DNA from: Bispira polyomma
Taxonomy: Eukaryota
Assembly (NCBI GenBank): GCA_965649765.1
Contig: OZ287752.1
Location: 52,948,001-53,012,000, forward strand
Reading direction: 5' to 3'
DNA: 64,000 nt
How positions within the stretch are numbered: position 1 is the stretch's first letter; every line of letters begins with the position of its first letter. Of the stretch, positions 7,198 to 61,915 are shown one piece after another. The notes beneath the pieces are model-generated. The model was given only the letters and a program-made list of their open reading frames with translations. It was not told the origin of the DNA and searched no databases. The translations under genes were made by a program, and so were the position numbers.

Positions 7198-7213
7198 GTC
7201 CCTTTTCAGGGTC
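7198..7213 (+). promoter_or_regulatory. Histone-type 3' stem-loop (degenerate) ~38 nt after the nuclease stop
   Basis: aatc GTCCCT TTTC AGGGTC accct..tccaagaaca. Confidence 0.7.
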
Positions 7214-7471
7214 ACCCTACTTTCCAAGAACAATTGTTAAAGCTATGTTTACTAAATATAATTTGAAATAAACCCCTCACTGCCAAGCCCTTTAACAATT
7301 ATTTACAACTTGTGGGGGGGGGGGGGGGGGGGTGTTAGGGTTCAGCTGTTTTGTAAAATTTGTGTGTTTGAGTGAGGTAAGTATCTTTGCTGGGCCAGTA
7401 AGTATTTTGTTCTGATGGGTTTTTTGATATTTGTAACAACAACTCAAATATTTGTTCTTGAAATATTTGGT

Positions 7472-7487
7472 GGCCCTGCAAAAGGCC
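7472..7487 (-). promoter_or_regulatory. Histone-type 3' stem-loop after the MADF gene
   Basis: minus strand: atc GGCCTT TTGC AGGGCC accaaatatttcaagaaca. Confidence 0.7.
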
Positions 7488-7494
7488 GATACAT

Positions 7495-8910
7495 TTAAAG
7501 TCCTTCTCAGGACATTGGAGGAAAAGGTGGAGGAGGGCTGGAGAACTGGTGGAGGTAGTTTTACTGACGGTGTGTTGGATGTGGCAGTTGCTTTAGCTGT
7601 CGTGGTCGTTTGAAAGTCATCACCCTCCTCTGTTATTGGCAAGGAGTATTTAGGTTGGGGTAGTCTCCTGCTGTGATCCCCGAGAGGTAGAGACAAGGAG
7701 GACTGGTTGTGGAAGTCTGAGCCCACTGACGGGATGTCAGAGAAGTGGAAAGAGCTGGGCGCACTCTTCTGTGGTGAAGGTAGGTGTATCAATGTGCCGG
7801 TTGGTGTTTGTCCACTTGAGACATCTCGCTGGGCTGCTGCCTCTGGAATGACTGCACTTTTGTTGGTGTCCATGTCAATTGCGGATACTGCTGTGGTGGT
7901 GGTGCTGGTCCCTGGTGATGCTGCTGCTGCTGTTCTTGCTGCTGGGCGGTACGCATCTGGTGATACACGGGCCTGTACGGTTGTTGATCTGCTGCTGGGA
8001 CGTTAAATTGGACAACAGGTGGCACGTCTTCGTTTGAAACTCCATAAACAGATTGTCTGGTAATATGTCAGCCTGGGCCTTGTTGAAGTATACCACCCTC
8101 GGCCCTGATGCTGATGGCTTTGGGTAGACTGAGACTTCTTTGATTAAGCCTCCTATCATGCCCTCCATTCTTTCAGGGTACACCTGAAAGAGACTTGGTT
8201 GTCTGATGTGCTTGCGGTAGAGGTATGCATTCTCTTGGCCCCGAAGTCGTCGATAAAGCAACCTCGGAACCAACCAGGGAGACATCTACATCGGACACAT
8301 CACTTATGCGGTGAGGTGATGGTGAGGATGTCCTGGGGCCCCCGGACTTCTTCATGCACTGTCGGATGATGTGCGGCTTTATGAAGGTGAAATGTTTATT
8401 CACCCAAGACTGTCTCTTGGTCAACTCGATTGGGGCCTGGCCAGACTTAGAAATACTCAGTTTCCCAAACATTGTCCTTTGTGATTGAAACCAACATTTC
8501 CGGATCTCTGCCCATCTTAGCCACAATTTCTGCCAGCAAGCTTCCTGCTTGACAATGTCCTGTTAATTCTTATTTCTCTAGATGAAAAGCAAGTCATGTT
8601 CTCTGAGCCAGTCCACTAGGGCTTTCTCCTCCAGTACCCTCAGCACATCAATTTTTGTTTTTCCCCTCCTGTATTTTCTGGTGTGTGTCACCCTGCCGGC
8701 GGACTTGTACAGGTCGGATTCGGTTGTTATTGCTTCGCCTTCTCCTTCCTATGGCCTCACTATTTCTTCTTCAAAAATCCTCTCGTATGGTGGTGGTGTT
8801 TCCTGTCGAACCTCCTCCTCCTCCTCCTCCTACTGATGAAACCTGGACTCTTTCTCATTCACAGTTGGAGCCATCCTCCTCTTCTTGCCTTTGCTTCCCT
8901 TGGGTGGCAT
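7495..8910 (-). pseudogene. Harbinger MADF/Myb-SANT DNA-binding gene, apparently intronless, with stops and frameshifts
   Basis: ATG 8910 MPPKGSKGKKRR..EEKALVDWLREHDLLF..WFQSQRTMFGKL..KSGQAP..RQSWVNKHFTFIKPHI; Gln-rich C-terminus; TATAAATA at 9103-9096. Confidence 0.75.
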
Positions 8911-11568
8911 TTTAAAACTATCAATAATAATATTTTTCTACAAAATATTTTCTAAAATCTCAAAAAAAAAAAGTCCTAAAAGCTATCTATAAATCTGTGT
9001 AATATCTATTTATTATCTGTGAGAAAAATGCCAGTACTCATGTACACTCATAAAAATGTGAAAATCAAATAAGGAAAAAGTGAGGAGCTTACCCCTATTT
9101 ATACCAATCGGCATAACCACCCTGATTGTTAGGATCAATCGGGGCCCACCCCGGCTAATCGTTATTGGCCACGGCTAATCTTTACAATCCAGATGTCACC
9201 CAGAGTAATCCTAACAATCAGGGAAGCCACCTTGGTTAATCTTTACAATCGCGGTGGCCAATCAGAGTGTCAGGAGGAGCCCTCCCCTCATAGTCAAGGT
9301 CAATGAGGGAGAAATTGACTGCGATTACTCAGGGTGACATGAAGATTAACCGGGGTGGTATTAGGAGTACTCCGGTTAACTCCCAATTTACCGGGTGTAG
9401 AGGGGGGTAAAATCTCCAATCGCGAAACTTTCTGGACATGTCTACGAGTACGTTATTTGGTCCCTGGATTACATGTATTGTGTCCAGATCAATCTTGGAT
9501 CATCAGGATTAACTAAGATGGTTCAGGATTACGTCCAAAGTAGCCTTGAATCAAGTTGCTCCCGATCGATGTTCACAGTGGAACAGGACCATAATCAAGA
9601 TTTAACGAAATCGTTAGCGTAACAAAGGCTTTGATTTACAGCCCCTGCTCAGTGAGCTGATCATTTAGGGAATGCAATACGTTATAAATCACTAGAATGT
9701 CATATTGTGAGTAGTTTTAATGACTTTGTAAAGCGGTTTATTTTAATGATGGGGATTTATTCAGACGTTACCATATTGCAGTAAATATAAACTATTAAAA
9801 TGTACCGTATGTCGATATTTGGTTGTGTTTCATGGGATCTCTCTGCATCAGAAGTAAATAAATTTGATAAACTTAGAGCAACATATGAAACAATTATTAA
9901 ATCATGGTGCTTATTTACATATAATTGTTGATGATATTTCTCTAGATAATTAGGAAATTTATAAAATTTTAACAGTATTATTTTTGCCAGTAATCTATTA
10001 TCGAGCTTTTGTGGTATTTTAGTTGTTAATAGAAGTAATTTTGTCATCTTCAAAAATTTAAATTTTGATATTACATATCCTCAGTACACCAGATTTAAAC
10101 AATTAGTTGATATGGAAACACAGTGACAAAGATATGTCGACAAAGATTGAGGACAATTAGTATATTTACAACATTAGTAAACCTCTAAAGTACATTGTTT
10201 ACATATCATGGTTACTAAGGTGTCCCTACATTAATAGCGAGTTAAGTTTGTAGATAAAATGAGTCACAAAGATTTTACCTCAGCTTGGGATTGAGTTCAT
10301 GGTAGCGAAAATAAAATTACTATGATTACCTTATCTTAAAAATAAGTTTAAGGTTGCAGTATTTAAACAAAAGTCACTGAGGCTTAAGAAAGGTTGAAAT
10401 TGACAGTTTACACCAACTTCAATCTTTCTAATTAGAATTTTACATCATAAGAAATAAGTAAACATTTTACCGAATTCTCCAGCATTCCTGAGAGATTGTA
10501 CATGTAAGAATGTGAATTATATACTTGAGTTACTATCGGTGCCTGATCTACCAATGATATAAAATTTCATAAATGATTACACTATTGGATAAATTGGAGT
10601 TTTAACTGTAAATTATTGGATGTATAATAAACACAAAGACAGTAGGTTAGGATTTGAGTAGTAAGTATTGAAATGAGAAGGCCACTGACCCAGACTGTTG
10701 CTCTTGAACCAAGTAAGCCCACACAGTATCTGTCCAAGTTTCATGATCTTCAAGGTTTTGTAATGAAACGTTAGAATTATAAGTAAAGGGAGCGCCCGGG
10801 CGTTTGAAAGAGTGAAAGGTAACCTCTCTGTGACAGAGGCCAGCTTTTGCTAGTATTAAACACAGGTTTCAACGTACCTTTGAATCAGTAAGTGAAACAC
10901 CATGTGGCTTAAAAACAGTCACTTTTAGCCAGGTGGTAAACTGGATCAAAAGAACTAATTTTAAGACCCACCAAGTCAGATATACTTATAAACGAAAATA
11001 GGCAGTTATATACACTGCCTTAAAAATCTGTATTACATACGTTTACCATTCTTGTTGGAGCTTCCACGTCGAATGCAGATTGTAATTTTGTTTTAAAGAT
11101 ATATTAATTATAATTGGAGTTTTGACACAATCTCAGCCTGCGATCACCAAACAACTACATGGATAAGCCGTCAACTACAAATTGAGCCTTAATAATAGCC
11201 AGATCATTTGCCAGAGCAGACGTGGAAGCTCTGTTTTAAACTAAAAATTCAAGGTAAAAGATCATTTTGGCAAACTGCTACCTGAGAGGTTGGGCAACAG
11301 AGGAAGACTAGATATGCCAGAAAGTCCTAGAACATAGATTGGTAGTATTAGGGCGAAAGGATGCCTGTAATGCTCCAGAAGCAGCAGAAGTCAAACTCTC
11401 TATTAGGTACACCCAAAATAGAGAATACAAGAAATCAGCCACAAACAAATATTGGATATTAAGAGGTTTCCAGTATGGGTTGACAATTTCGTGACGTGAC
11501 ATATTATTATTAGCAATTGAAATAATCCACATGTACAACAAGTCAGCAATGCCATTGTCAGCGCCCAT

Positions 11569-12800: not shown

Positions 12801-12834
12801 TATTCAATCAGTTCAATCATAATCATAAGTAAAA

Positions 12835-13185: not shown

Positions 13186-13189
13186 CTAT

Positions 13190-20149: not shown

Positions 20150-20187
<38 letters not shown>

Positions 20188-24342: not shown

Positions 24343-25319
24343 CTAAGGGGGAGAGGGGATGATGGAAGCGAAAGTAAGTGGAACTACAGCAGCCTGAGAG
24401 GAAGAATGCTGGAGATAGGCCCAGATGGCAGAACTACGCCACAGGCCGTGGGACATTATATGCTGTAGGGAAACATTGTTGTTAAATGCCAGGGATGCCC
24501 CCGACCTACGAAAAGTGTGGAAGCCATGGTAACTATGGTCTATCCCTATGTGCTGCAACACAGTTCTTAATGCAGTTCTAATATGGGAGTCAATGACTGG
24601 TAAGTAAGGGGGGAAAGAAGCTACAAAAAGTGGATGAGTGGGGGAAAGTTCCCTAGACTGAATAAGATGAGTAAGGGCCAGAACAGGACAAAGTGATTTA
24701 TCTTTTAGGACAGGAAGTTGTACTACGTGTGTATCAGTTCTGTTCTGCATGTTTTTGGCCCACTTGAGTATTAGATGAGCCCCAGGGTGGCCAAAAATAA
24801 TGTCCTGTCTTAACAGGTGCCTGGTAGGGTCAAATTTGCTTCTTGAGTGGGGGGCAATGTTTGACATCCTTAAAAATCCAAAGAATGCTACAAGAAATAT
24901 GGCCCTGTATAATGTAGGGTCGTTTAGAATAGAGCAAGTTCTTGATATGTTCTGAAGTAATTGGATGTCAAAGATTCCCTTTTTGTGTGGTTTAAAATCA
25001 GATGAAAGTGCCACGCTTCTGAGAAACAGGGACACCGAGTTGTGTGTTAACACCTGAGTGTTTAAGTTCTACTTAGAAAACATAAACTTTAGAGCAGCCA
25101 CGTAGTTGTTGACCACTCGAGGAGAAATGTTGTTTTGGGTGAGGTATTCTAGGAATGCCAGAATAGAGTGGACTGAGACCTGTTGAAGGCCAGAGTAATG
25201 TAAAAACGCTAAATAAGTCTTGAACTGTGAGTTGTATGCACTGGTAGTTGATGGCCTGAGAGCTGAATCCAGTCGCTGTACAGCTGCCAGTACCAGGGGT
25301 ATAGTAGATGGTGCTGCAC
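24343..25319 (-). CDS. Ngaro-1 tyrosine recombinase (one in-frame stop near 25070)
   Basis: GFLRMSN, CPV, HTFRRSGA, GLWRS, WAYL catalytic motifs; frame extends to a splice acceptor at 25320. Confidence 0.9.
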
Positions 25320-27947: not shown

Positions 27948-28019
27948 GTTACTATCTACACTATTGTTACAAGATCCGCACTTTCTAATTGTTCATTTGG
28001 TTAGTCGTTGACAACACCC

Positions 28020-29198: not shown

Positions 29199-29859
29199 GT
29201 TTATAACTAAAATATTTGCAGTAAAAGAACACTATAACACCTTGTATTTCAAATTTAAAAAAAATTTAATGTTTACTGTTGCACACTTCAATCCAATATG
29301 GTGGAATAAGCAGGGGAGCAAATAAGTAAAATAAGGGGGGACCCCTAATTGGTAACCACAAAGGGGATAGAGAGAGGAAAGGAGAGTATACCTATGCTAA
29401 TTAAGGTAGGAATAAAATTAGGAGAAAGGGGTTTTAGGAACTGAACTATCAGACCCCTGTAGGGTCGTGATGTTCAAAGCCATGGCTTAAGCAACGTGAG
29501 GAACATGGGCATTACTCTGCACTTCTCCCTGCCTGGAACTACAAAATGGGGAGTCATACAGTAACTTCCTCAGGAAATCACCTGATGCATTCCAAGAGAT
29601 GGAGAGGAGGGTGGGCATAGGAGGTCCACCATAGCCAAGTTGGTCCCCAGGTGTGGCTGGCAATCATTGATGAATAACAGAAGGAATTCTTGTCTTGCCC
29701 GACAACTCCACAGGGCTGGAAGAAGTGAAGGGGTTTTAATTTTGTTTTTAATTGTGTGTACGTGAGATGATTTATTTTGAGGGGCCAGTTTGCTTCTTGT
29801 AATGAGGGTATTTTTTCATTTAACAAGCAGCTCAGATAATTTTTTTCAAACGTTTGGGT

Positions 29860-29875
29860 GGCCCTGAAAAGGGCC
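29860..29875 (-). promoter_or_regulatory. Perfect histone-type 3' stem-loop after the MADF C-terminus
   Basis: minus strand: tgatc GGCCCT TTTC AGGGCC accca. Confidence 0.85.
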
Positions 29876-30489: not shown

Positions 30490-31041
30490 ATGGCAACTGT
30501 TGGCTGCAGTGGGTCATGGTCGGACTCCCAGATATTCAACCAATGTGAGCTGAGAGACATGATCAAGGACGGCTCAATTGGATTTCCCCCACCGCGACGC
30601 ATCAGCCCGACCAGACTTGCAGTGCCATGCTTTATCCTGGCCAATGACACCTTTGCACTGAAACCATGGCTGATGAAGCCTTTCTCCTGCCAAGGCATGA
30701 CCACTAAGCAGAGGATCTATAACTACAGGATAAGCAGGGGCAGAAGGATGGTGAAGAATGCCTTCAGGATCCTTAGCAACAGATGGAGGGTACTCTTGAC
30801 CACCATCCAGCAAGAACCTGATGTGGCGGCAACCGTGACCATGACATATTGTGTGCTACTCAGGACAAGATATAGGACCCTGGCAGTGGAAGAATACATG
30901 ATGAAACCTAATGAGCTACAGGGGGATGATCAGGCCCTGCCCAGACCAAATCCCAACAGAGAGGCCAAAGGCCAGAGAGAGCTGCTGATGCAGTACTTTA
31001 ACATAAAGGGAGCAGTGCCTTGGCAACAGGGAAGAATCTAA
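30490..31041 (+). pseudogene. Harbinger DDE nuclease C-terminal half
   Basis: GSWSDSQIF, NDTFALKPWLMKPF, YNYRISRGRRMVKNAF.ILSNRWR. Confidence 0.9.
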
Positions 31042-31078: not shown

Positions 31079-31094
31079 GGCCCTTATCAGGGCC
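31079..31094 (+). promoter_or_regulatory. Histone-type 3' stem-loop ~38 nt after the nuclease stop
   Basis: aatc GGCCCT TATC AGGGCC accct. Confidence 0.85.
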
Positions 31095-31244
31095 ACCCTA
31101 ATTTTCCAGGAACAATTGATATGCTAGTTTTGCTAAAAAAAGAAATAAACCCCTCACTACCATATACCATATACACACAGGCCCCATATTTAACTAATCT
31201 CTGTCAGACACATCAAAACACAAGCAACTGCATTAATAAAAATA

Positions 31245-31510: not shown

Positions 31511-31605
31511 GAGTGAGGTAAGATTATTTGGTTGGTGTTTTGTTCTGATTGGATGTTTGGTATTTGTAAACAACATCTCCAACAAATGTTCTTGAAATAT
31601 TTAGT

Positions 31606-31621
31606 GGCCCTGATAAGAGCC
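31606..31621 (-). promoter_or_regulatory. Histone-type 3' stem-loop after the MADF gene
   Basis: minus strand: atc GGCTCT TATC AGGGCC actaaatatttcaagaaca. Confidence 0.8.
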
Positions 31622-39210: not shown

Positions 39211-39466
39211 GGGGCCGCGGTGGCCCAGTGGTTAGCAAGCATTGTGCTTCACAATCACTGGTCTCTCACCTCTGGGCGGCCTCAGTTCAAATCTCGCCAA
39301 TGCCTATGTGGGAAAGGTGGTAGTTCCTTACTGTGGGCCGCTGGTTTCTCTGCAGAACCTTGACCGACTGTATGCAGTGTTTTCTCCAGCGTTTCCAACT
39401 GCCCGTCCTAATATAACCTACTAAAAGGTACTAGAGTGGACGTTAAATATCCAAATTCAAATTCAA
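39211..39466 (+). mobile_element. tRNA-derived SINE, same family, inside the Harbinger-2 MADF gene
   Basis: A box TGGCCCAGTGG, B box GTTCAAATC; 14-bp TSD CCCTCCTCTCTGCT at 39197-39210 and 39467-39480. Confidence 0.9.
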
Positions 39467-42400: not shown

Positions 42401-43813
42401 AACATGTTTGGGTCCTTAAGTGACAATGGGAATCCAAACTTAAGGTATTGGTCAATGAGCTTATCTAGGTGATCCTGTGTGATATTCTCCCAGGCAGCAA
42501 TGTTGAAATCAGATTTGATTGGCTTGCGTGCCTGTTGGTAGTTTGGGACACCTGTATTTTCTAATAATGTCTGAGATTTCACACAGATTTGATGTGGACC
42601 GAATCCTTGTCAGGACCCACAAATTCAAACTTAGTTTCAGAAAGTTTAATAAAACCTGTGGACTTGTTATGATCATAAAAATCCTTAACCTGGTGATTTA
42701 TAGAAGAAGGTTGTAAGATAATTGGCAAGTCGCTTGACTTGTTCATTATCTCAAAGGCGGAGCGGTGACTGATACTAGCTTTAGACATTGTTTCATTGAT
42801 AATATTGGTGTTGTCAATATTATCTGTATACATGTCATTTGATTGATTATCAATCATCAACTTGTAAATTATATTACAGATGTGGTGGGTATAGTCACAT
42901 CCGTTAGTACTGAAGCAAGCCGTGTCTTTACTATGATAATACCAGGCCAAATTGGCTTCCTCTAACTGATCAGTATTGTAACCGCCAGTATTATTTGTGT
43001 TCATATTTATCAGAATACAAGAATTATAAGTGTGCATCACACTGATTGGACAAGTGGACATTTGCCTCACACTTTAGTAAGTGATAGTATTAGTTTCGCT
43101 ATCCCAGAATTCATAGTAAAAGTCCGACATAGCTTCACATACTTTAATGTACAAATGTACTATAGGATATTAGTAACAGTAACAGTATTAGCCAAGTTAC
43201 TCAGTTGATTTAAGACTGAAACTCTACAGATACAAGAAAGATTAGGAACCTGTATGGATGCATTATTGCCCGTATACTCAAGGTATGCTTTTTCAGCCCC
43301 TTCAATAACGTCCTCTATCCCCGTGTCAAGTGTTTTCTCAGAATTGACCAAAATAGTATCTGCAGTATTAGAATTAACGTCAGTACTACCATTGGCCATG
43401 TTGCCAATGTATCAACCGCTGATTGATAACATCAGCTTTTTCCACTTTATAGTGGGAATCAACCTGCAGCAATTCCTGAAATGCATTATGTACAATATTA
43501 TGTCTACTGTCTATGGTGATCTCAATATCACTGGTATAATTATTTACTAAATCAATTAATTTGAGTTCAGAATTACTAATTTCAGAAGCACCAACAGTGC
43601 TATTGTCTCTACTAAATTTATAATTTTTCCTGATACTACAAACTTTAATCTTAGAGTCTACGTCCAAGTATAGCAGTGGTCTAAGCAGCTGACCAACTTC
43701 CTAGCTACTGGTTTTGGAGCTGTTCGCCTTCAGTCATTTAAATTCAGGGTGGTTATTTTCTTTGTTCAAATGTATGAAACAGTGGGAACAGATGTGTCGA
43801 TATTGGCTGTGAT

Positions 43814-46800
43814 CAGACTTGGGGCGAATACATGTGAAAAGTATTCGAATACGAATACTTTCTAATTTTACGAATGCAAATATGAATACACTGATTTTGA
43901 AAGTATTCCAATACGAATATGTATACATTTGCAATGTATTCATGAATGCATTCATGAATACTTTAACTTCAAACAAGGTTTAATTTTCTCTATTTTAAAT
44001 TTTAAGTATAGTACTATTGAAGTAAAATTAATGTCTTCAAAACATTTATTCCAAATAACCATTGACATTAATTTGCATTTAGTTTAACACTAAAAACAAT
44101 AATTGACTGTGTGTGTAGTACAAAAAGCCTTATATCTAAATTGTAATTAATAAACTGGTGGGTTAAACCTATTGAAGGCCTATTGATAAAACAAAGGCTT
44201 TTGATAAATTTAGAACTTTTTTGTTTTCTGCATTAAGTAATACATGTTATCATGATTCTGCTTTTCTTATACTTTAAACTGCACAAAAAAAATAGATAAA
44301 ACAATAATAAAAAGTATCACTTTGCATAATCCTGATTATTAATGATAACTTGTATTTAATAGTTATTTATTATTTAATACACAAAGTCTTTTCTTTAGAA
44401 GAGGTGAAGTAAATACTATATTTTAGCACAGGATTATTATTGAATAGTTTTCTCTAAATATGGTAAATATTGCTCCTCACTGCATTAATAAACATTAAGG
44501 CATCATATACAGAAAATAGTGACACAAGCCATACAGATGATTAATTAGAGGCCCTTTCATTTAGTGGGCTGCCACCTATTGTTTATGTACTCTTTATACT
44601 CTTTGTTATACACACTAGTTAATCCTTTTATTTACTAGACAAATTTGCTTTGGGTTGGATAATGACATGGTGATGATTTGATTTTAACCAAGAAATAAGA
44701 TATTTTTTAATATTTTTAACATGAAATTTTCACTACTTCATTGTTAGATTCACAACATTATTTACCAGATTACACTTGGCTGTTTTTATTTTATTTCTTT
44801 AAAAAAAGTGAAAATGTATTATTTAAAGTATTCATGAATATGAATACATTTGCAATGTATTCGAAAACGAATATGAATACTTTGCCAAAAATAAAATGTA
44901 TTGGATTACTAATACGAATGCTTCATAAAATCTATTCGAATGCATTCAAATACAAATGCAGAATACGAACAGTCCACTTGATAGTTGAGATAAAAGATTG
45001 ACCAACATATATAGTAAGTGAATGAAATTGTCCATGGAGTAAGTTATTTTTTTAAAGATCAGTAATGAGATTTCTGTTTGAGCATTTTATTTTTTATATA
45101 CATGTTAGTATATATATACAGGTTAACAATTTGTAAAATGAATGTTTAAAATTTTATAAATTTTTAAGCCCCAATAGGGAACAACACAAACAGACTTAGT
45201 CCGCAAACAATATAACAATAAAGGACTAGCCAATTAATAGTGTATAGGACTAGCCTGTACAAATAACATATAAAATATCACATTTAAAAAGTACGTTTTA
45301 CTCTTCATAGTTTTAAACCTCGATAAGTGGATATATATGAAACTCTAAAATGCTTGGACGAATAATTTTGTCATAAATGGTCATTTTTTAATCACATTAA
45401 GTACATACATCACCGTCGTAAACTAAACATAAACCATGTTTCTAAACATGCTAATATAAATGTGCACATAACTTGCACCCGTTATATTTCCTATCCATTT
45501 AAACTGGACTAATAATTTTGTAAATAAGCCCAAACTGAGGAAGATCTCCATAAGCCATGTGACATTATGTTCTGTAAAGATACGTTATGGTTAAAGGCAA
45601 AGGTTGCACCAGACCTTCTAAATGTGTGAAAACCATGTGTTGAGTATTGAATACCTATATGTGTTAAGACTTTCTCAAGTGCAGTTCGCACATGTGTTTC
45701 CACTACAGTTTGGAATGGACTTAAGTTTACTGCAAACAGTGGTGCAGTAGGAGGTAAAGGTCTAGAAGCTAATAAGTTCCTCAACGCCAGAACAGGACAA
45801 ATAGCCTTGTTCTGCAGCTGTGGAATCTGTATAATATGTGTGTCTGTTCTGTTCTGTAGATTTTTGGCCCACTTCAGAATGATGTGGGCCCCTGGGTGTC
45901 CAAAAATAATGTCTCGTCTGAGAAAATGTCTGGTATTATCAAATGAAGCCCTAGAATGTGGGGCAATCTTTGAAAGCCTAAGAAAAGCAAAATAAGCCAC
46001 TAGAAATATAGCCCTATATAATATGGGATCATGTAAAATGTCACAAGCCCTAGCAATACCAGTCAACTGTGAAATATCAAATAAGCCCTTATGTTTAGGC
46101 CAAAATGTAGAGTTTATCGTGATACTTCTGATAAATAATGCCACAGCGTTGTGGGTGAAGGGTGCCAAATCCCAATTTAGCTTTCTGGCCATGAATTTCA
46201 ATGATGATAAATAATTAGCTATTACAGCTGGAGAAGTGTTGTTCTGAGTAAGATATTCTAAAAATGCCAACACTGAATGAACCGAAATTTGAGTGATACC
46301 TGTAAACTGATTGAATGCCAGGAATGCCTTAAACTGATTATTATAGCTAGCAGTTGTCTTTGGTCTTAGAGCTGTATCTATTCTACTGCATGCTGAATTG
46401 ATGAAGTGTTGGCTGGAAGGAGTGGAACCTGAAATTATATTGATAAGTTAAGATCCAAATGTGTGAAAGGCACCACTTCCCAGTTAAAATTGTTGTATAA
46501 ATCATACAATGTTTGTTTGTTGGGTGGTGTTTCACAGTATATTCTGGATAATGCATCAGCTGTAACATTAAGTTTCCCTGGAATATGTTTAATATTAATA
46601 GTGATATCATGTGTTGCAGTTATTAGCCAAATATTCCTTAAACAAAGGGCCAGAAAGTCATCTTTAGTTTTTTGATTCTCGACAACCAGTACAATGGCCA
46701 TGTTGTCACAGTGAACAATTAGTCTACTGTGAGCCCATTTTTCCCCCCAAATTTTTAAGGCAATAACTATATTGAGCATCTCAAGATGCACGATGGTAAG

Positions 46801-49800
46801 TTCCTTAGCATATACATTGTAATATAGAGTTGCTTATACCTGCTTATTCCAAACACCTCCCAAGCCTGATAAGCAGGCGTCCAGATGTAAATTTGTATCA
46901 CTTAAACTTTTTTTTGGATCAATGTAAGTAATTCCATTGTATTGAGGTAAAAATTTCTAAACCAAGCCAAGTCTGCTTGCATTTCTTGAGTAACGTCAAA
47001 TTTGTTTGTAAATTGGTTATGTCTGAATGTGAATAGAAGTCTATTTATAAAAGAACGTGCAGAACGTACACATTTCTGGATGTAGAGTAGTTTGCCTAAC
47101 AAAGATTGAAATTTTGTACGTGAAATGTGGCACTTATTAGACACGTCCTTAACTGTTTCTAAAATTTCTTTTATTTTTTCAGGTTGTATGCTAATTGTTC
47201 CTGCTACTATGTGAAAATCTATACCTAAGCATGTAAGTCTTGTAGTAGGAGGGGTAAATTTGTCAGCATTCATGGGAAAACCTAATTTTTCCAATAACTT
47301 ACTCAAAATGTTGAAGCCTTTTTCTGCTTCTCGCTTACTGCAGATGCAAATGTAGTCATCGATATAACAGAATAGATTGTAACCGTGTTTCTTCATATGT
47401 GATGCAATTGCGTCCGAACACCGCTGAAAAGAGGCGCTTCCGTGTATCCAGCCGAACGCTATCGCAGGGTCCACATATTGGCCTTCAGCGAATTCAATTT
47501 TAAGGCATCTACTGGATCAACTCTGAGATTACGGAACGTTCAGGCCACGTCAATTTTGAATAATACTGGATCTATTGTATTACGAATTGCTTCTGTTATA
47601 TCATCAATTGTGAGAAATTTCAGTAAAAACTTGACCCCATTGAATTGCGTTCTGTCAACATTTTCATTTACAGAGCTGCCCTGAGGGTAAGATAGGTTAA
47701 GTATTACTCTGCGTTTGTCTGTGTCCTTTGGTCTAGTGAGAAGAGGGGAGCAGTGGTAGTGTGGCGAATTAACCTTTGCTACTGGGCCCAACACGGCGCC
47801 CTTTGACTTTTCTTTGGCCAGATATTCCCCAACTTCCTTAGAAAATTGTAAAGCAGAGTAGTGATTTATGATTTGGCATTCCTTAGTTGTGAAGGGTCAG
47901 TAAGTGATAATGGGAAACCAAATTTAATATATTGTAAGAGTAGCTGGTCTGGATAATCTACCAACATTTCTTCCCATGCTTTGTGGTGTAAGCTTGAGAT
48001 AAGTGGAATTCTTGCCTGCTTATAGTTAAGGAATCCTGTGCCTAATCCTGTGCCTAATTACAGCAGCAATTTCCAACATTTTCTCAATTGAGTCAATTTC
48101 CCTAGGTTCTTGTTCAGGGCCTGTAAATTCAAAGTTTGTTGGAGATAGTGCTGTGAAACCTACTTTCTTATCCCTTATGTTAATATCCTTAATTTGCTTG
48201 TTACTGATGATATCAGTAGGGTCAAGTACACTAGTTTTGAAGAAGAAATCACGGATTGGACATGTGTATATTTTATCACTAGGCACTCTGTTCAGAGTCT
48301 GTTGCCTATCCATGTTACTTACTGTTTCACTGGTTGTATCACCCCATAAAGCCTCAGCTTTGTTGGAGTCTGCAGCTTCAACATTACACATTTTTTCAAT
48401 AATATTTTCCACATATGTTGTATAATCATAACCATGACTTTTATAACACATAATATCTCTATTATAAAAATAGTGATCATTCCTTGCCTGTTGTCTTTCC
48501 TCGGTATCTGCCTGGTTGGCCTCTGCCCAATGGGCTATACTACTGCTTTTTGTGGGTGCATAAATGACTGTGTTAAACACATCAATAATAGTTATTGTTA
48601 GTAACTCACTGTTAATCTGATTCTGTAAAGATTCATGCAGATCTTCACCTTGGAGCACAACATGGCTCAGAAAGTGACCATTCTTAAGCAAGTTTAAGAG
48701 AGATTACATTGTCTACCTGGTATTCATCTTGTACCTGATGGAAACCCTGCAAAATGTCGTTGTGACTGGTCTGAAATTCAAATTCAGAAGAAATATTAGA
48801 AACAGATTTTTGGCTGCTGCCTGTTATAACAGGGACGTTCACATCGTTATCAGTTACTTCTAAAGGCACATTCCTGTAACAAGATGAAATAACATTGTTG
48901 ACTACATTATGACTAACATTATTTACATTGTGATATAGATAATCATTTTTAAATGTTTTTCCATACATATTATTTGCATTACACATCATGTTAGAATGAC
49001 TATTAACATTACTTTCCACTATCTTAGCCTCACATATTGTTTCTATTCTGCTATTACATTCAGTTCTAATTGTTCGTTTAACTGGTTGTTGAAAAATATC
49101 CTAGCTAGTTTTACTTTGGTTTGATTGACTATCTAGCTGCTTACTATTTGCTCTATAACATTTAAATTCCGGATGATTGGAATCTTTCCCTAAAGTACGG
49201 CTACAATGCCAACAGACATGCCTGTAATTACTGTGATCTGTATTATGACTACATTTTCCATTGTTATAAAGTTTACAGATCATTTTTGTTTCACTATTGC
49301 TTGTTATACTGCTAGAAGAAGCACCATTCAGCATGGCCATCTGAGAAGCACTTAATCTATTAAGTTCCCACTGGGTGTCGTTCGCCCAAGAGAGCCTGCC
49401 TTCCTCCACCTCGTGCATACTAACTGCCTATGCTGTTCTCACGACATGCCAGGGGAGAGACGAAGCGTCCTGAAGTGCTGCAATTACCTGCCTAATCATG
49501 TCACTCATCTCATTAGGATCTGCAATAAGGAGAGAGTTCGCTAGCTGCCCTGCAGCCCACTGGGCCATCGAGAGGTAGTCGAATGCAGGTTTCTTCTTGG
49601 CTGATCCGCCTACCCAGCCCTCATTGGGCCAGCGTAATCTAGAGTCTACTGTTTTCACATCTGTGCTATTAAATCTACCTGACTTATGCTTAAGTGACGG
49701 CTTACCTTGAGATAAATCTCTGTTAGCCATGGCCGTGTACTGAGCCAACTGTCTAGATACTTCTGCCTGGACGTGTGGCAACAAATGAAGTGTGTCTACA

Positions 49801-50864
49801 CTCGGCACGATTCCATCCTGGTGGAAATCAGTCCCTGTGGGAGCAGGTTGTGTAGTGGTCAACATCTCATGTGGAACGTTCTACATGTAAGTGGGTGGAA
49901 GGCCCGTGACAGGTACCGACGAAACGTGAGTAGCCGACCCACTGGCTGCTTGTGGAAACGCGCCCAAGTTGTGCTGTGTAGCTGTAGGTTGAGTACCCAC
50001 GGGTGGTAGTTGAGTAATGGGCGTGACCTGGCCAAAGAGGCCGAGGGTAGCCGAAGACGCCCCTGTTGGATGGGTCGTGAGCAGCGAAGCCGTCGTCGGA
50101 ATCTGGGGGATCATCAACCCGTGAGATGTGCCCAATACTGGTGGTAAAACTGACGTTGTCGCGTTCACCACAGATGTCTGCTCGACTTTTGACAGTCGTT
50201 TTGAGAGCTCTGCGTTAGAAGATTCTAATCTTAGCAAAATTGCCATCATTTCAGACGACTTGTCGGGTGACTGTGAACTCGGCCTAAGTAAATGGCCCTT
50301 TTGTGACATAATCGGGGATGCCTCACTCTGTACTTGCTGGTATACTAGATCAGTATCTGCCGAGTCGTGGGCACTAGATGAACCCCCTACCTCTACTAAC
50401 TGACTGTTAAGGTTCATTATTATAGAATCTGATACCTGTCCTTTTTTACCACGTTTAGTTGACAAAGGCTTTTTCATTGACTTCTTTGCAGTACTCTGTG
50501 TGGGCGTTTTCTTCGTCCTTCCCATATTTCACAATATAAAATACACGACTAGCAACAGTATAAAAAGTATGTAAACTAAAACAAAATAAAATAAAATCTA
50601 TCACAGCTCGTTTAAACACGGTTTAAGAAAAAAAATTTCCACTTGTTGTCTCGTTGAAATCGAAGTTTAAAATAGCCAATTCAATATGGAGTTTGAAAAG
50701 TGAAGCTTAAGCTGCAAGTGTGTGGGCTATGATTGGCTAGAGGTTGGTACACAATTTTTGGGTATACGCCTAAAGCTAAATTTAAGGTAATGAAGTATAT
50801 AATGTTTAAGGTGGACTGAACTAACAGTCCCCTAAAGGGGCCTGTTGAGCATACCCCATGCCTG
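43814..50864. mobile_element. hAT-type MITE (43814-44969 plus 50852-50864) split by Ngaro-5
   Basis: TIRs CAGACTTGGGG / CCCCATGCCTG; 8-bp TSD GCTGTGAT at 43806-43813 and 50865-50872; gaatac/gtattc subterminal repeats. Confidence 0.85.
44970..50851 (-). mobile_element. Ngaro-type YR retrotransposon 5 (B1-A2 deleted)
   Basis: gag 50525-49101; pol 49019-46435 with frameshifts (YIDD); YR 46428-45509 (HTFRRSGA, GLW, AYL); B2 starts cagt at 44970. Confidence 0.9.
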
Positions 50865-54206: not shown

Positions 54207-57200
54207 AGCTTTACAAGTAAATAAAATAAGTTAGCAAGTCGTATCATATACATTTATCACAAGGGGCAGTGGAGGGTGGGTATTTGAATTTTCCTAGTGC
54301 TTCTGCTGACGAACGGTAAAAAGGCGGGAGAATTTGAAAGGGGGATGGCTTATATACTCGCCCATCCATCCCATAGTAGTGAACCGCCTGGTACCCTAGA
54401 ACTGAGGCCGCTAATGCTGGGGGCGTTAGCTTTCACAGTTCCTCGGTGTGTGGGCAGGGTATAGTTATTTAACCAACAACTCACAGTAATAACAGATTGC
54501 GGTTAAATACTTTATTATATATATATGATTTCTACTACTAGCATATTTTATACAGTTTATTTGTAAAATACGTAATACTGTTGTGGGCATAAGGTTCCCT
54601 TAACTCAAATGAGTTTAAGGCCTTGAGCTTATGCAAAGCTTACGTTTAAGTGACCTTAAGTACAATGAATTTAAGAGTTTAAGTTTGCCAAATTTGACTT
54701 TGAGTCCAAACTTAGAGAATTTGAGTTTAAGGTGATGAGTTTAAGTTTGGTAAATTTTTTTGTTTAAGTGCAAACTTAAGAGATTAAACTTTAAGGTTAT
54801 GCTACTCTAAATTTTGACTTAGGGTTTTAAGTCGAACTTTAGATACTTGAGTACAATATGTACTAATATAATAAAGGGGGACCTTATGCCCAAAAAGGTA
54901 TAATATTTAGTGTTATTGTCTATTTTGCCAGATCTTAAGCCTAAATATTTAAGTTAGACCACCAAACCCCAAACTAGTAGGTATTTTGTAGAACGTCTTT
55001 AAAAGAATCTGCAACTTGAGTACCAGCATCAGCAGAGTCTGAGATGTAACGCCAAACGCAATCCGACGTCCAGGTGCCTTGTCTCTGAATATCTTGAATT
55101 TTGACATTATTGTTAAACGCAAAGGTCGCACCTGAACGTCGGAAAGCGTGTCCGTTAGTGAAACCCATGAGCCTTGGAGTTTAAACTGAAATAATGGGAG
55201 ATTTTTCCCTTTTGGTGAGATCGCTAACACAGCTTTTAAGGCCTGAACAGGACAAAGAATTGAATTTTGTATACTTGGGATGGTTAGCGATCGAACTGCA
55301 TCATTTCTCTGCAGTGTCTTTGACCATTTGATCATAATGACTGCATACTCTGGCTTAAATAAGACATCAGCTCTAGCTAGTTGTTTGAGAGGAGAGTATG
55401 ACCCCATTGAATGAGGACACAAATTGGATAAATGCAGAAATGTGAAAAAACTTGTCAAATAAACAGCCTTGAAAATTTGGCCCATGTAAATGCTATCACA
55501 TTTACTGATAAGAGCCCTAAGCAAGTGCACATCAAAAATTGACTTCAACTTAACTTGTAAAGGTATATGCATAGCCAAGGCTTTAGTGAAATAAGAAATT
55601 CTCTGGTCAGAAAATACTTGAACATCTATATGAAACATGACACATTTTGCTATTATAGCCGAGATGTGATTTACTACTTGAGTGGTTGATACATCATTGA
55701 AATTTAGAAACTCTAAATATGCTAAAACTTGCAACAGAGTCACCTTGTGGGGAGGCCACGACATAAAGACTCCAAAAGCTAGGAACTGTCTGTACATTCT
55801 GTCATATGCTTTATTAGTGGCTGGAGTGAGTGCTGAATTCAGCCTATCACAAGCCCTTTTCATCAAAGCCAGACCCACAGGGTGAGTGCCTGAAAAAAAG
55901 AAAAACTGAAACCTGCTATATAAAAGTATTCACATGAAGTAAGTTTTCAGGGGCAGGAAGCCATTGAATTGGTCCAGCCAGTTGGTTTAGTAATAGGTGG
56001 TTACTTTCTGTCTCGGCCCATCTGGAAAGTAAGTCAGCCACTTTATTTTCTCTACCTAGAATGTGGACTACAACAATTTCAATGTCAAACTTACCAGCTA
56101 ACATGTATATGTTTCTAGTATAAGTGGCCAATGTGGGATCTCTAGTACGTCTTGTCTGTAAGACACTGACTACTGCTTGATTATCACATCTCACTAGAAC
56201 TCTCTGACCCTTCCATTTTTGGACTCATAACTTCATTGCTACCAAAATATTCAACATTTCCAGAGAAGCTATGTTATATTCTGTCATACTTGTAGGAACT
56301 TTGATTTGATATACTTGATTTCCATAATTCCCCCCCCCCCCCCCCCCCCCATCCCTGTGAGGCAGGCATCCGATTCTATCTCGCCTGATATGGGTTTATG
56401 TAAGAAAAAGGAGACACCATTGAACTGCTCTGCAAAAGTTCTAAACCAATTTAAGTCACGTCTGAATGCATCACTTATTACAATTTTCCTTTTACTATGA
56501 TTATCTCGTAGCAGTTCCAACATTCTATTTAAGAAAACCCGAGCATATTTAATGCATTTAGAGATATATAGCAAGAGGCCCAGTAAGGACTGCAATTCTC
56601 TCTTGGTACAATAATTTTTTGAAGCCCAATCCCTGCACTTGCTCTGAATTTCTACCATTTTTTCAGATGGGATAGAAGTTGTGCATTTGGCTGTGTCGAT
56701 TATTATGCCTAAGCAGACTACCTCAGTGCTGGGTGGAACCAATTTTTTCTGACTAACTGTAAGACCCAGTTCGTCAAGCAATTCTTGCAACCTTAGGAAC
56801 GTTTTCTGAATTTTGCTGGGAAGTGATACACATAAAAAATCGTCGATATAAGTGTGGACGTTATGATTTTCTGAGTGCATTATGAAACGCACTGCATCTG
56901 AAATTCGTTGAAAAATAGTACTGCTATTTAAATAACCGAACGGCAGCGATTTATCGACATAGTAAGATTTCCACTTCAACCCTAAGAGGTCAATGTCGCC
57001 AGGGTCGATAGGGATGTGTCGAAACGCCCTACTCACGTCTATTTTAAATATCTGACAACCCTTTCCCAATTTAGACACTTCGCTAGTAAGGTGATCAATA
57101 GAAGGGTAAGACAGTAAAAAATCAACACCCAGATACGAAGTCGGAGACGCCCCTGCATTTACTGAAGCCCCCTGAGGCCAACTCAAATCCACAATCACAT

Positions 57201-59959
57201 GTCTGTTAAGCAAGTTGGGTTTATGTCTGGTCATTAGAGGGGAACAATGCAAATTCCGAATTGGTGGAGTGTTGAAAGGACCAAGCATTGCCCCAAAGTC
57301 ACATTCTTCCTATATATAGGTATCTACATGTTGAGGAAATTCCTCTGCCGACTTATGGTTAGTTTCATTCGACTCGGTATGAATTGTGTGACACACATGG
57401 AGAGGGAATCCATATTTTATGAGGAGAGGCAGTTGCCAATCCCAGTATGTTTGTAAATACTTCCCCCAAGTTTTTGCCTTTAATTGTGAATAGACAGGAA
57501 TTTGGATGCCAGTATAATCATACCTGCCATCAACACGTAGTTTCTCATGCATTTGTAATATGGATAGTTTTGGCCCTTCCTCACCATGGTCTGCAATCTC
57601 ACTGCCCAAAGCCGAGAGAGGAGTAAATCCATAAGCATGACTACTCTGGTCCTGCCATTTTTTGTGTGTTTGATTTAAAGCCGCCTTTTCCAGTAACTCC
57701 CGTTTATTTTTCTTGTGCTTTAAAGCACACAAATACTTATCAGAGGTTTCAACATTTTCATTAACACGTTCTGTGCAAGTACTTGTCTCTTGGTGCTTTG
57801 CAAAGCCCCTATTGTTACCTGGCGTGGTACCAGAGCGAACGACCTTCACAATGGCTGCATTGTCCTCCACAGGTATTTGTGTCAACACGGAAAACCTATT
57901 GTTAAGCTGGAGGCCACAATTAACTTTATTGACGTGGCTCTTTTCACCCCCCCCTCTGAGTCAATGTTCTAACACCTTTTGTCTCCACGCCCTGTTGCTT
58001 TGTGCATGGGGGTCACTTTACAATAGGTGTCACCTTCTTAGCCACTTGAATAGAGGTGCCAACTACAGGTGTTACCTTTTCAGACCTTTGAATAAATGTG
58101 GCAGCCGAGGTGTCAACATTATTTTTAGGTTCAGCTCTGCCAACCTTTTGTGGTTGGCAAAACCTCCCCTTTTGTATCACCTTTTCAGAGCTAAACCTGT
58201 CAACCTCACCCTTATGCCTCAAAATTTCTGTATGTCTAGTATCATGTACAAACATTGATTTTCTGGTACTAGCAGTACTTTTTAAAGCCTCACTATAACT
58301 AACATTCGGCCTTTTAACCTTCATGTATTTACACATTTTCTGATACACATTTTTTCCAATAAATGAAAATCTTTGAAGCCTGTGCCATAAACAGTTCTAT
58401 TTACAACCTTAGTATTTGCAACCTTTTTGTCCACTGCATTCAAGCAGTGGCCCCTCAGTTTTTTTGGCTCTTTCTTGCTACACATAGTGGTCATATGACT
58501 ACCCCACAAGTTTCACAACTGTGCCTATACATTTTCCCCCCTGCGTTATGTGAGCTAGAGAACTTGCAAGTTCCTTCTTGAAAGAACCTGCAAGGCGTTG
58601 ACTTTTTCTGACTAGTTTTACTACTGCCAGTACTACCATTCGCCCCATAAAAAGATCTTGACACGCCTACATGGCGTTGGGCGTGTGCCCTGCGGATCCG
58701 GTCAACCTTCTCGACATCCAACCACCCGAGCTTGTCCATTTCCATATTTGTCAGGACTACCGCGTGTCAGGCTTTCGCCACCTCCCACGAAAAATCTTGG
58801 GTGTCCTCCATGAGGCCACTCATGTAATCTAGCATAGCGTTCTTAATTTCAGTCGACTTCTTCTCGTGCACGATCTGGGTGAAGCCACAAACCCATTGAA
58901 CAAGGGTTAAGTCGTCATAACTAGGGCGAGTCTTCGAACTGCCGGTCAGCACATAATTCTGGGGCCATTCGACTGCCTTTTTTACAATAACCTCGTTTCC
59001 CCCAGTTCTCAGAGACTTAATTTTACCTGAGGGAGTTTCATTGAGAGCCCGGAGATCTTTTAACCTCTGTTCGACTTGCAACTGAATCTGAGCGTTCTGA
59101 CTTAGAAATTTGACACTCGGAACGACAGTATCTTGGCCTGCACCAGGTGAGCTTTTACCTTCGTCAGCAGAGACTAGATCTTTAGAAACACTAGGAGTGA
59201 TACTAGAAGTAACGGTACTTGCCTTACTAATGGTGAGGTTGGCTGCCAACGCTGCCTCTGTCTGCTGGACTCGCCGATCCATCCTCTCCATTACCTGACT
59301 AAGCGATTGCAGCTGCTGTAATATAGCGCTAGATACGGCCTCGTTCGGATGAACCAGCAAGTCCTCATGCGAGCCAGTGCCAACATCCACTTCCTCACCT
59401 GACACATCAGGCATACTAACCGAACAGTTCTCTCATGTTTTTGCAAACACTTCGGACAATACACAATTTTTCTACCTGGCATGACTTGAGTGTGTACTAA
59501 ATTAAAATACTAAAACCAAAATAAAACAGTATAAAAACACTCTCTTTGTCACCCAAACAGTATTTGAATTTTTCTAGTGCGTCTGCTGACGAACGGTAAA
59601 AAGGCGGGAGAATTTGAAAGGGGGATGGCTTATATACTTGCCCATCCATCCCATAGTAGTGAACAGCCTGGTACCCCAGAACTGAGGCCGCTAACACTGG
59701 GGGCATTAGCTTTCAATTTGGTATTTGGGACACTCAGGGTTCTTCGCTACTGGTTTTCAAACATGGAAATATATATGAATATAAAAAAATATATAGGGCC
59801 ATGACAGTCATCTTCATCGCATTCAGTTCCAGCTTTCAGAGAGTGAACATCTATTGGTAAAAAAAGAAATATTTTACTGAGACAGAGTAATTAATTATTC
59901 TTTGAGTGATAAAATAGAATATTATTATCCCACCAAAAAAGAAATAAAAAAAACAGGAG

Positions 59960-61330
59960 GATAGAGATAGTGGGGAAGGATAGTACAAAGAGTTCCATCC
60001 GGGGGAGACACTTAGGGAAAAAATCGGGCCAGAGCCACAGCTGACACAGATGGGTTTACTGTCGCAGGATGTTAGGACCCAGGATGAGATACAGGACACT
60101 GCTGCAGAAGGGGAAGTGACTGATATCATCAGGAGGCAGAAGAAGGGGGAAAGGAGGACAGTTTAAGTTACGAATGACTAAGAGGAGGCCGTGGTGGATT
60201 TAATCAAGGATTGTGAGTGGTTGTATAACAAGTGACACGCTTTGTATAAGGACACACAGAAGAAGGACATCCTTTGGCAAGATTTCTGCCTCACCAGGAG
60301 ATTAGACGCAGATGAGGTTAAGAAGTGGTTCTAGTCACAGCGTACCATCTACAGAAAACGGAGTCTACACAATTCTGGCCATGCACTTCCTGATATGACT
60401 GACCGCCAGAAGTTGGTTAAAGGGACATTTGAATTTCTGAGGCCACATATCATCTGTCATGTTAACAAGACCACTGTGTTCAAGCTAATTCTGGATCAAC
60501 TGGATCTCAGTCAGACACTGACCAAGGCGATGTCGAGATGCAGTCTTCCATAACCATTGCTTGGCCTGGCAGACCATTCAAGCAGTTTTCCACATATGGG
60601 TTGTTAACCCCTACCCCAGAACTTTCCACAGAGCTGAGAGACAGAATTAGTCGCATGAAGAACAGCATCACAGGGTTTTTGAAGGAGGCCACCAAGACGA
60701 AGAGAGAGGGATCCACAGGTGCTTTCCTGAACTGGTTGACTCTGAAAACAGTAAAAACTTCCCGACCAGTACTTAACTCAATTCAGGAGAGAAACATTCA
60801 ACAATCTCCAAAAGATGGCTTCTACTTCTCAAAACATGGTGCCACCCTTTTAACTGTAGCAGTTTCAACAGCCTATTACCTTGAGTCAGATGGTGCCACC
60901 TTTCTTCATTCCACAGAAACCACAGCAACAAAGACACTTCGTGTACCACCAGCCACAGCTTAGACCACAGCCACCACAGCCTCCTGAGCACTCGCTGGTC
61001 AAGCCCCCACAACAGTTCATTCAGGTTGTCACATCACAAATCCTTAATGAAAGTTTGATGGCCAGCCCCAGTAGTATTCAGTACTACCAGGCACCCACAT
61101 AGAAGTCGGATCTCCTCAACAAATATCAGTATTATCACTTGTGAGAGGATTTGAATTGGCTATGAGAACATTAACACTCCTCATCCTTTTATGCCTCTGG
61201 GGCCAGACACTCAGCTGACAGACACAACCACTTTCACCACAACCATCACAACCACTTTGTCAACAGCCAGCACCAGCTCCAACACAACTGACCAGCAAAT
61301 AGCCTCCACTCCTCTTCTCAGCAACCCGAA
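59960..61330 (+). pseudogene. Harbinger MADF/Myb gene remnant
   Basis: EEAVVDLIKDCEWLYNK..YKDTQKKDILWQ..VKKWF.SQRT..FEFLRPHI; Gln/Pro/Thr-rich C-terminus. Confidence 0.75.
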
Positions 61331-61331
61331 A

Positions 61332-61347
61332 GGCCTTTTTCAGGGCC
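61332..61347 (+). promoter_or_regulatory. Histone-type 3' stem-loop after the MADF gene
   Basis: ccgaaa GGCCTT TTTC AGGGCC actca. Confidence 0.8.
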
Positions 61348-61544
61348 ACTCAAAACTTCCAAAAACAATATCTAAGCTTTTGTTGTTCGTTCCCCCCAAA
61401 AATGAAAAAAGCCCTCATGACCAGAACAAACTGCCCCAACAAATAACTTAACTCACGTACACACAGAAACAAAAACTACTTGCCCCCCTGCACACAAAAA
61501 TGAAAATAAATTGTAAACATTTTGAAATATGTAAGAAATGATTG

Positions 61545-61735
61545 CTATAAAAGATTCTACTGGAAGAGGTCTGGAAGGGGGCTTCACATAACAGGAAAAT
61601 TGAGTTCATAGAGTTCTACTTGGAGGGGTCTCCACATAAAAAGGAAATTGAGTTAACATAGTTCTACTTAAAGGGGTCCCGACATAAAAGGGAAAGTAAG
61701 TTTACAGAGTTCCACTTCAAAGGGTTTCATAAGTT
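61545..61735. repeat. ~45-bp minisatellite between the stem-loop arms
   Basis: Unit resembling aggaaattgagttcatagagttctacttggaggggtctccacata, about 4 copies. Confidence 0.7.
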
Positions 61736-61899
61736 TAAAAGTTAACAATTTATTTGTATTAATGTGTGTAGGGGGGCAAGTACATGTAGTTTTTGTTTCT
61801 GTGTGTACGCGAGTTAATTCATTTGTAGGGCAGTTTGCTTCTTGTCATGGGGGCTTTCTTTCAACAAAAGCTCAGATATTGTTTGAAAAAGTTTTGGGT

Positions 61900-61915
61900 G
61901 GCCCTGAAAAGGGCC
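61900..61915 (-). promoter_or_regulatory. Perfect histone-type 3' stem-loop ~44 nt after the nuclease stop
   Basis: minus strand: aaaaa GGCCCT TTTC AGGGCC accca. Confidence 0.9.

What the first reader, a model, noticed from the sequence alone, without database searches (positions are those of the whole stretch)
7198..61915. Harbinger transposase and MADF genes end in replication-dependent-histone stem-loops
Seen: seven 16-nt hairpins matching the metazoan histone mRNA 3' stem-loop (GGYYCT-TTTC-AGRGCC followed by ACC/ACT) at 7198+, 7472-, 29860-, 31079+, 31606-, 61332+ and 61900-. Each lies on the sense strand just after a Harbinger gene: about 38-44 nt after the nuclease stops and directly after the MADF ends. 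They occur in four element copies from more than one diverged family, and I saw no histone gene in the window. Most stem variants are U-G wobbles on the mRNA strand, and six of the seven loops keep U1 and U3. Several are followed 10-15 nt later by a purine-rich CAAGAACA or CAAAAACA resembling invertebrate U7-binding HDEs. Established: this hairpin binds SLBP and, with U7 snRNP, gives non-polyadenylated, S-phase-restricted or maternally stored mRNA, and is regarded as histone-specific. Inference: these cut-and-paste transposons use the histone mRNA pathway to time both proteins to S phase, when excision behind the fork raises copy number, or to oocytes and early embryos. I know of no description of this.
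Basis: partly seen in the sequence, partly recalled or inferred. Interest (0 to 1): 0.95.

Follow-up and report, generated by a model that had tools for sequence, protein, structure and literature searches.

The report
Transposon genes with histone-type mRNA ends
Both genes of a group of cut-and-paste transposons end in the two-part signal that animals are thought to use only to finish histone messages, matched to this host's own histone signal and to its probable U7 RNA, so they have probably borrowed the histone RNA machinery, although no RNA data could test this.

Summary
Confirmed. All seven hairpins are real, far beyond chance, match Rfam Histone3 and lie on the sense strand after the transposase or MADF gene of four decayed PIF/Harbinger copies. 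This host's histone genes carry the same hairpin, then CAARAACA 12 nt later, then a further conserved block. The transposon ends copy all three at the same spacing: 181 of 344 exact transposon-type hairpins genome-wide keep CAARAACA while the spacer varies. A pattern predicted beforehand found one genomic U7 snRNA candidate with the exact U7 Sm site; its flanks could not be read. Related elements in another assembly keep the signal with compensatory pairs and have TWA target duplications. Bivalve, snail, urchin and amphioxus relatives lack it. In metagenomes the hairpin also follows mariner, piggyBac, Merlin-like and other mobile genes. No RNA data exist, so processing is inferred (about 0.8) and S-phase or oocyte timing is untested (about 0.5). 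The scan reported this phenomenon before on other DNA of this genome; the few lines shown from those notes do not mention a U7 candidate or other superfamilies.

The parts
6623..9646 (.). Harbinger copy 1 (family A), internally deleted; imperfect inverted ends at 6623-6648 and 9621-9646
   Evidence: no clean 3-bp target duplication
6832..7160 (+). 3' remnant of the transposase gene of copy 1
   Evidence: tblastn; stop at 7158-7160
7198..7245 (+). Histone-type 3' end: hairpin 7198-7213 (one broken pair), ACC, CAAGAACA at 7225-7232; AATAAA follows 53 nt after the stem
7440..7487 (-). Histone-type 3' end of the MADF gene of copy 1: hairpin 7472-7487, CAAGAACA at 7460-7453
7508..8910 (-). MADF/Myb-like gene of copy 1, broken by stops and frameshifts, apparently intronless
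   Evidence: tblastn to intact MADF protein E 9e-17; six-frame translation
29481..29725 (+). 5' remnant of a transposase gene (copy 4, related to family B); the rest and its hairpin are deleted
29828..29875 (-). Histone-type 3' end of the second gene of copy 4: perfect hairpin 29860-29875, decayed downstream element
   Evidence: Rfam 36.7 bits
29880..30400 (-). 3' part of the second (MADF-type) gene of copy 4, cut off where copy 2 begins
   Evidence: translation and position; assignment is inference
30490..31041 (+). 3' half of the transposase gene of copy 2 (family A)
   Evidence: Pfam DDE_Tnp_4 E 1e-15
31079..31126 (+). Histone-type 3' end: hairpin 31079-31094, CAGGAACA at 31107-31114; AATAAA 49 nt after the stem
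   Evidence: Rfam 30.7 bits
31227..31508 (.). 44-nt tandem repeats in the spacer between the facing 3' ends
31574..31621 (-). Histone-type 3' end of the MADF gene of copy 2: hairpin 31606-31621, CAAGAACA at 31594-31587
   Evidence: Rfam 26 bits
31640..32263 (-). 3' part of the MADF gene of copy 2; its 5' part and the element end continue at about 39113-40218 after a 6.8-kb insertion
   Evidence: blastn to copy 1
60050..61331 (+). MADF gene of copy 3 (family B), broken; 5' limit approximate
   Evidence: tblastn E 4e-12
61332..61379 (+). Histone-type 3' end: hairpin 61332-61347, CAAAAACA at 61360-61367
   Evidence: Rfam 32.7 bits
61329..61918 (.). Spacer of copy 3; its two 190-nt ends form an inverted repeat (76%), so the two 3' ends are homologous
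61868..61915 (-). Histone-type 3' end of the transposase of copy 3: perfect hairpin 61900-61915
   Evidence: Rfam 39.4 bits
61926..61941 (-). Decayed second (tandem) hairpin upstream of the main one
   Evidence: tandem hairpins also in L007 and L090
61949..63150 (-). Transposase gene of copy 3, about full length but broken; 5' limit approximate
   Evidence: Pfam DDE_Tnp_4 E 9e-14; tblastn

Best explanation
A clade of PIF/Harbinger DNA transposons carries a working replication-dependent-histone 3' end after each of its two facing, intronless genes. In active copies SLBP would bind the hairpin, the host U7 snRNP would pair with the downstream element, and CPSF73 would cut 4-5 nt after the stem, giving non-polyadenylated transposase and MADF mRNAs. 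Shown: the cis signals, their position, their match to the host's histone signal, their persistence across diverged families and a second genome, and one U7-like locus complementary to them. Inferred: binding and cleavage (about 0.8). Further inferred and untested: the benefit is expression during S phase or storage in oocytes, where excision behind the fork and sister-templated repair raise copy number in the germ line (about 0.5); clean termination between facing genes may add to it. The window copies are dead relics.
For: Host H1, H2A, H2B, H3 and H4 genes end in hairpin + ACC + 9 nt + CAARAACA + a further conserved block. Transposon ends copy this, with the element at offset 11-12 in 32 of 40 distinct ends. 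The exact transposon-type hairpin occurs 344 times (reversed control 0), 181 of them with CAARAACA at nearly constant spacing and many different spacers. An a-priori U7 pattern gave one genome hit (expected 0.35) that also reads the full U7 Sm site AAUUUGUCU followed by UG; those extra letters have about 0.002 chance; Sm consensus from PMC7026596. It has U opposite the variable A/G of CAARAACA and pairs with histone and transposon ends alike (mean -17.6 vs -15.8 to -17.8 kcal/mol; other hosts -8.1). A second assembly has the signal after both genes in two families, with G-C to A-U and C-G to U-A changes. These elements form one clade with ours (SH-aLRT 99, quick tree); relatives in Pinctada, Ruditapes, Gigantopelta, Diadema and Branchiostoma lack the signal. 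An 11-copy subfamily with an inherited frameshift through the catalytic motif lost the transposase hairpin, while the 7 copies whose MADF end was seen keep that hairpin.
Against: No RNA evidence: the only runs found behave as DNA. No wobble excess among variant stems genome-wide (103 vs 93, p 0.52). An AATAAA lies about 50 nt behind the transposase hairpin in family A. The U7 candidate's 3' hairpin and promoter could not be read, Rfam RF00066 did not report it, and the duplex test is partly circular because the pattern came from the downstream element. Dispersed copies lie outside histone clusters, where processing may be weaker (own knowledge).
Confidence: 0.8

Rival explanations
1. Mixed or partial use: the hairpin binds SLBP or slows the polymerase, but most mRNA is polyadenylated further downstream, as for histone genes that make both forms.
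For: AATAAA 49-53 nt behind the family A transposase hairpin and 39-45 nt behind two other transposase hairpins. Dispersed location.
Against: Many ends have no AATAAA nearby. The U7-pairing element is kept at fixed spacing, which only U7 cleavage needs.
Confidence: 0.1
2. The palindrome is a DNA binding site for the element's MADF protein or transposase, needed in cis for transposition.
For: It is a near-perfect DNA palindrome, present twice in inverted orientation; compensatory changes fit DNA symmetry too; no wobble bias genome-wide.
Against: The repeated subterminal motifs of a near-intact element are a different sequence, and the hairpin arms are absent from the ends. The loop, ACC and downstream element are one-sided and always on the sense strand. 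A subfamily spread without the transposase-side hairpin. Unrelated superfamilies carry the same hairpin after their stops.
Confidence: 0.04
3. A histone gene 3' end was captured once, duplicated by inversion and carried along without function.
For: The two 3' regions of family B are a 190-nt inverted repeat; all window copies are dead; own-genome and second-assembly elements form one clade, so a single origin is possible.
Against: Transposases only 45-55% identical keep hairpin, spacing and downstream element while spacer and flanks diverge. Stems changed in compensated pairs. A Harbinger outside the clade has the hairpin with a different downstream element.
Confidence: 0.05

Closest known systems
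Metazoan replication-dependent histone mRNA 3' end (Rfam RF00032; SLBP, U7 snRNP, CPSF73)
   Same: 6-4-6 hairpin with U-rich loop, ACC after the stem, downstream element at fixed spacing, short distance from the stop codon, intronless gene; identical in layout to this host's histone genes.
   Different: It follows transposase and MADF genes; PMC7026596 calls histone mRNAs the only known non-polyadenylated eukaryotic mRNAs. The stem is mostly C-G at pair 4 where host histones have U-A; some ends are tandem; copies are dispersed.
PIF/Harbinger DNA transposons (HARBI1-like transposase plus Myb/SANT/MADF protein)
   Same: DDE_Tnp_4 transposase, facing MADF gene, inverted ends, TTA/TAA target duplications in near-intact relatives, subterminal repeats.
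   Different: Histone-type 3' ends on both genes. The MADF gene is one uninterrupted frame, whereas hairpin-less relatives in bivalves and an urchin have it split into separate frames, probably by introns.
U7 snRNA repression of HERV1/LTR12 elements in human cells (own knowledge, not checked here)
   Same: A link between U7 and mobile elements through downstream-element-like motifs.
   Different: As recalled, host repression without the histone hairpin; here the element itself keeps the full processing signal.

Membership tests
PIF/Harbinger transposon | DDE transposase of the HARBI1/DDE_Tnp_4 type | tested here: met
   Pfam PF13359 on two window frames
PIF/Harbinger transposon | Second gene with Myb/SANT/MADF domain | tested here: met
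   PF10545 on L090; tblastn of it to window 8631-8326 and 60170-60451
PIF/Harbinger transposon | Terminal inverted repeats | tested here: met
   Imperfect inverted ends in L090/L212 and in window copy 1
PIF/Harbinger transposon | 3-bp TWA target site duplication (own knowledge of the family) | tested here: met
   TTA/TTA in L090 and TAA/TAA in L212; not clean in the decayed window copies
Replication-dependent histone 3' end | Conserved 16-nt hairpin with U-rich loop and ACC | tested here: met
Replication-dependent histone 3' end | Downstream element like the host's histone genes at the same spacing | tested here: met
Replication-dependent histone 3' end | Complementarity to the host U7 snRNA 5' end | tested here: inconclusive
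   One candidate with exact Sm site pairs well; its hairpin and promoter were not readable and the test is partly circular
Replication-dependent histone 3' end | Close to the stop codon of an intronless gene, sense strand | tested here: met
   33-39 nt in the window transposases; single frames in L090
Replication-dependent histone 3' end | mRNA ends 4-5 nt after the stem without poly(A) | not testable with these tools
   No RNA run of this organism
Replication-dependent histone 3' end | SLBP binding and S-phase-restricted expression | not testable with these tools
   Needs experiment

The most novel reading that the evidence does not exclude
Histone-type, U7-made, non-polyadenylated mRNA ends are not histone-specific. 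Mobile elements of several unrelated superfamilies (Harbinger, Tc1/mariner, piggyBac, Merlin/ISXO2-like, P2RX7-domain and SGNH-hydrolase elements) in invertebrates have repeatedly adopted them, tracking each host's own downstream element, to tie their expression to DNA replication or to oocytes.
Probability: 0.55. Interest if true: 0.93.

Novelty: new variant of a known kind. Interest (0 to 1): 0.86.

Why it matters
Replication-dependent histone mRNAs are described as the only eukaryotic mRNAs without poly(A) (PMC7026596). Transposon genes that keep the full, host-matched signal would be natural non-histone substrates of SLBP/U7; I found none described. They would offer a direct way for cut-and-paste elements to act during S phase, an old question of how they gain copies, and poly(A) RNA-seq would miss them. 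They also give a natural set of variants for testing whether histone 3' processing works outside histone gene clusters.

Tried and rejected
Wobble asymmetry as RNA-level evidence: rejected genome-wide (103 wobble vs 93 mismatch variants, p 0.52). RNA evidence: three runs found, all behave as DNA assemblies, no information on 3' ends. Rfam U7 model: three weak hits that look like copies of one repeat, not the candidate. The top DDE_Tnp_4 hits in this genome (30 loci) are other clades and have no hairpin after the transposase stop, a negative control. L088 first looked hairpin-negative but is a copy broken at the hairpin. L098 looked MADF-like by eye but was not confirmed. Two look-ups returned no DNA. 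The host of assembly ERZ22147071 and of this window were not identified. Seven paper searches for transposons with histone-type ends found no description; the library lacks most subscription journals and Repbase Reports. The tree is the quick one; the careful run did not finish.
Full report
Observation. The seven hairpins are present at the stated places and strands. A consensus search with two mismatches returns exactly these seven, against a shuffle mean of 0.01. All seven match Rfam Histone3, two above the gathering score. They belong to four decayed PIF/Harbinger copies of two families. Three follow a DDE_Tnp_4 transposase at 33-39 nt from the stop, and four follow the facing second gene. 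That gene matches an intact MADF protein in copies 1 and 3 and is assigned by similarity and position in copies 2 and 4. A decayed eighth hairpin lies in tandem at 61926-61941. All window copies are broken; copy 2 is split by a 6.8-kb insertion.

The host's own histone signal. The genome (1.04 Gb) has large histone arrays. Its H1, H2A, H2B, H3 and H4 genes end in the hairpin, ACC, nine variable bases, CAARAACA, and a further conserved block about 25-37 nt after the stem. The transposon ends reproduce all of this, with the element at offset 11-12 in 32 of 40 distinct ends. The exact transposon-type hairpin occurs 344 times genome-wide (reversed control 0). Of these, 181 carry CAARAACA, nearly all listed ones at the histone spacing, with many different spacers. 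I could not assign all 344 to elements. Eight of the ten best Rfam loci are not histone genes, and seven of these match the Harbinger transposase or MADF protein or read as a MADF end. Thirty loci of other DDE_Tnp_4 clades have no hairpin after their stops.

A U7 candidate. From the shared downstream sequence I wrote a pattern for the U7 5' end plus a partial Sm site. It gave one hit in the genome, G000:C5:22553898-22553929. One hit alone is unremarkable (0.35 expected). But the unspecified letters complete the exact U7 Sm site AAUUUGUCU and continue UG, with uridine as in Drosophila U7 (PMC7026596), which has about 0.002 chance. The candidate has U opposite the A/G position of CAARAACA, which would explain that variation by wobble. 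It pairs about equally with histone and transposon ends, and mostly poorly with ends from other hosts. This duplex test is partly circular.

Other genomes. Assembly ERZ22147071 is not this genome: its element is only 65-71% identical, over the transposase core. It holds hundreds of related proteins. A near-intact element there has a 433-codon transposase frame with one stop, an intact 405-aa MADF gene, inverted ends and TTA or TAA target duplications. Both genes end in hairpin plus CAAAAACA; the transposase hairpin is tandem and has two compensated pairs. A second family there does the same. Pair counts show three pairs with changes on both sides, though rows were chosen for having a hairpin. 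These elements and ours form one clade (SH-aLRT 99 in the quick tree). Relatives from Pinctada, Ruditapes, Gigantopelta, Diadema and Branchiostoma lack the signal. In three of them the MADF gene is split into separate frames, probably by introns, whereas hairpin-bearing genes are single frames like histone genes. One metagenome Harbinger outside the clade has the hairpin with a different downstream sequence, a possible independent gain.

RNA or DNA role. The repeated subterminal motifs of the near-intact element are a different sequence from the hairpin. An 11-copy subfamily in this genome shares a frameshift that removes the catalytic motif. All 11 share a broken transposase hairpin, while the 7 copies whose MADF end was seen keep that hairpin. 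This single event fits a signal tied to gene expression rather than to movement in cis. An AATAAA about 50 nt behind the family A transposase hairpin leaves room for polyadenylated forms.

Beyond Harbinger. Among 120 metagenome contigs with the exact hairpin, many are histone genes. Others place it 14-60 nt after the stop of Tc1/mariner transposases (eight contigs), an ISXO2/Merlin-like transposase, P2RX7-domain genes and SGNH hydrolases; a piggyBac transposase has a tandem run about 75 nt after its stop. Pfam confirmed one or two members per class; the rest are assigned by resemblance. In one sample series the non-histone genes share the downstream motif of that series' histone genes, which differs from ours. 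These hits were selected by the hairpin, have no denominators, and their hosts are unnamed.

Mechanism and status. Most likely SLBP binds the hairpin, U7 pairs downstream, and CPSF73 cuts 4-5 nt after the stem, giving non-polyadenylated transposase and MADF mRNAs (about 0.8; cis signals shown, processing inferred). Timing to S phase or oocytes is a plausible benefit but untested (about 0.5). Single-gene elements also carry the signal, so avoiding overlap between facing genes cannot be the whole reason. The only sequencing runs found behave as DNA. [quoted passage not shown] The scan noted the same phenomenon on other DNA of this genome; my reading was written before I saw those notes and rests on the tests above. 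Verdict: real, a known element type with an undescribed use of a known pathway; interest 0.86.

Noticed in passing
G000:C5:22553898-22553929 (+): Single-copy U7 snRNA candidate: about 20 nt complementary to the host histone downstream element, then the exact U7 Sm site; missed by Rfam RF00066.
   Followed up: partly
L099, L121, L145, L152, L173, L182, L189, L196: A Tc1/mariner transposase group from metagenomes ends in a perfect histone hairpin 17-33 nt after the stop, with differing downstream sequences; over 260 close homologs, no named host among those listed.
   Followed up: partly
L205, L170, L137, L133, L168, L109, L198: Histone hairpins after piggyBac (tandem run), ISXO2-like, P2RX7-domain, SGNH hydrolase, PC4-domain and another DDE_3 gene.
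   Followed up: partly
L093, L122, L143, L153, L162, L169 (sample Ga0256838) and L163, L167, L171, L210: Unknown non-histone open frames, some with a predicted membrane stretch, end in the histone hairpin; origin unclear, possibly viral or mobile.
   Followed up: no
L070-L084: Non-autonomous Harbinger subfamily with a shared frameshift through the catalytic motif and a shared broken transposase hairpin.
   Followed up: yes
G000:C4:54.71-54.81 Mb (L010): Histone H1 sits in its own 1727-bp tandem array, while the core histone genes lie in separate 4.8-4.9 kb repeat arrays.
   Followed up: no
window 24343-29198, 40797-43070, 45509-50525, 54949-59414: Several tyrosine-recombinase (DIRS/Ngaro-like) retroelement copies with reverse transcriptase, RNase H-like and integrase-like frames.
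   Followed up: partly
window 32260-32730: Very high-copy short repeat (depth hundreds of times the surroundings) inserted in the MADF gene of copy 2.
   Followed up: no
window 1947-5323 (-): Exons of a host gene with cysteine-rich repeats, a membrane stretch and 84-nt coding repeats ending in tyrosine motifs; receptor-like.
   Followed up: no
L037:2687 (-): An H4-type hairpin and downstream element near an unrelated transposase, on the opposite strand; probably a histone orphon.
   Followed up: no
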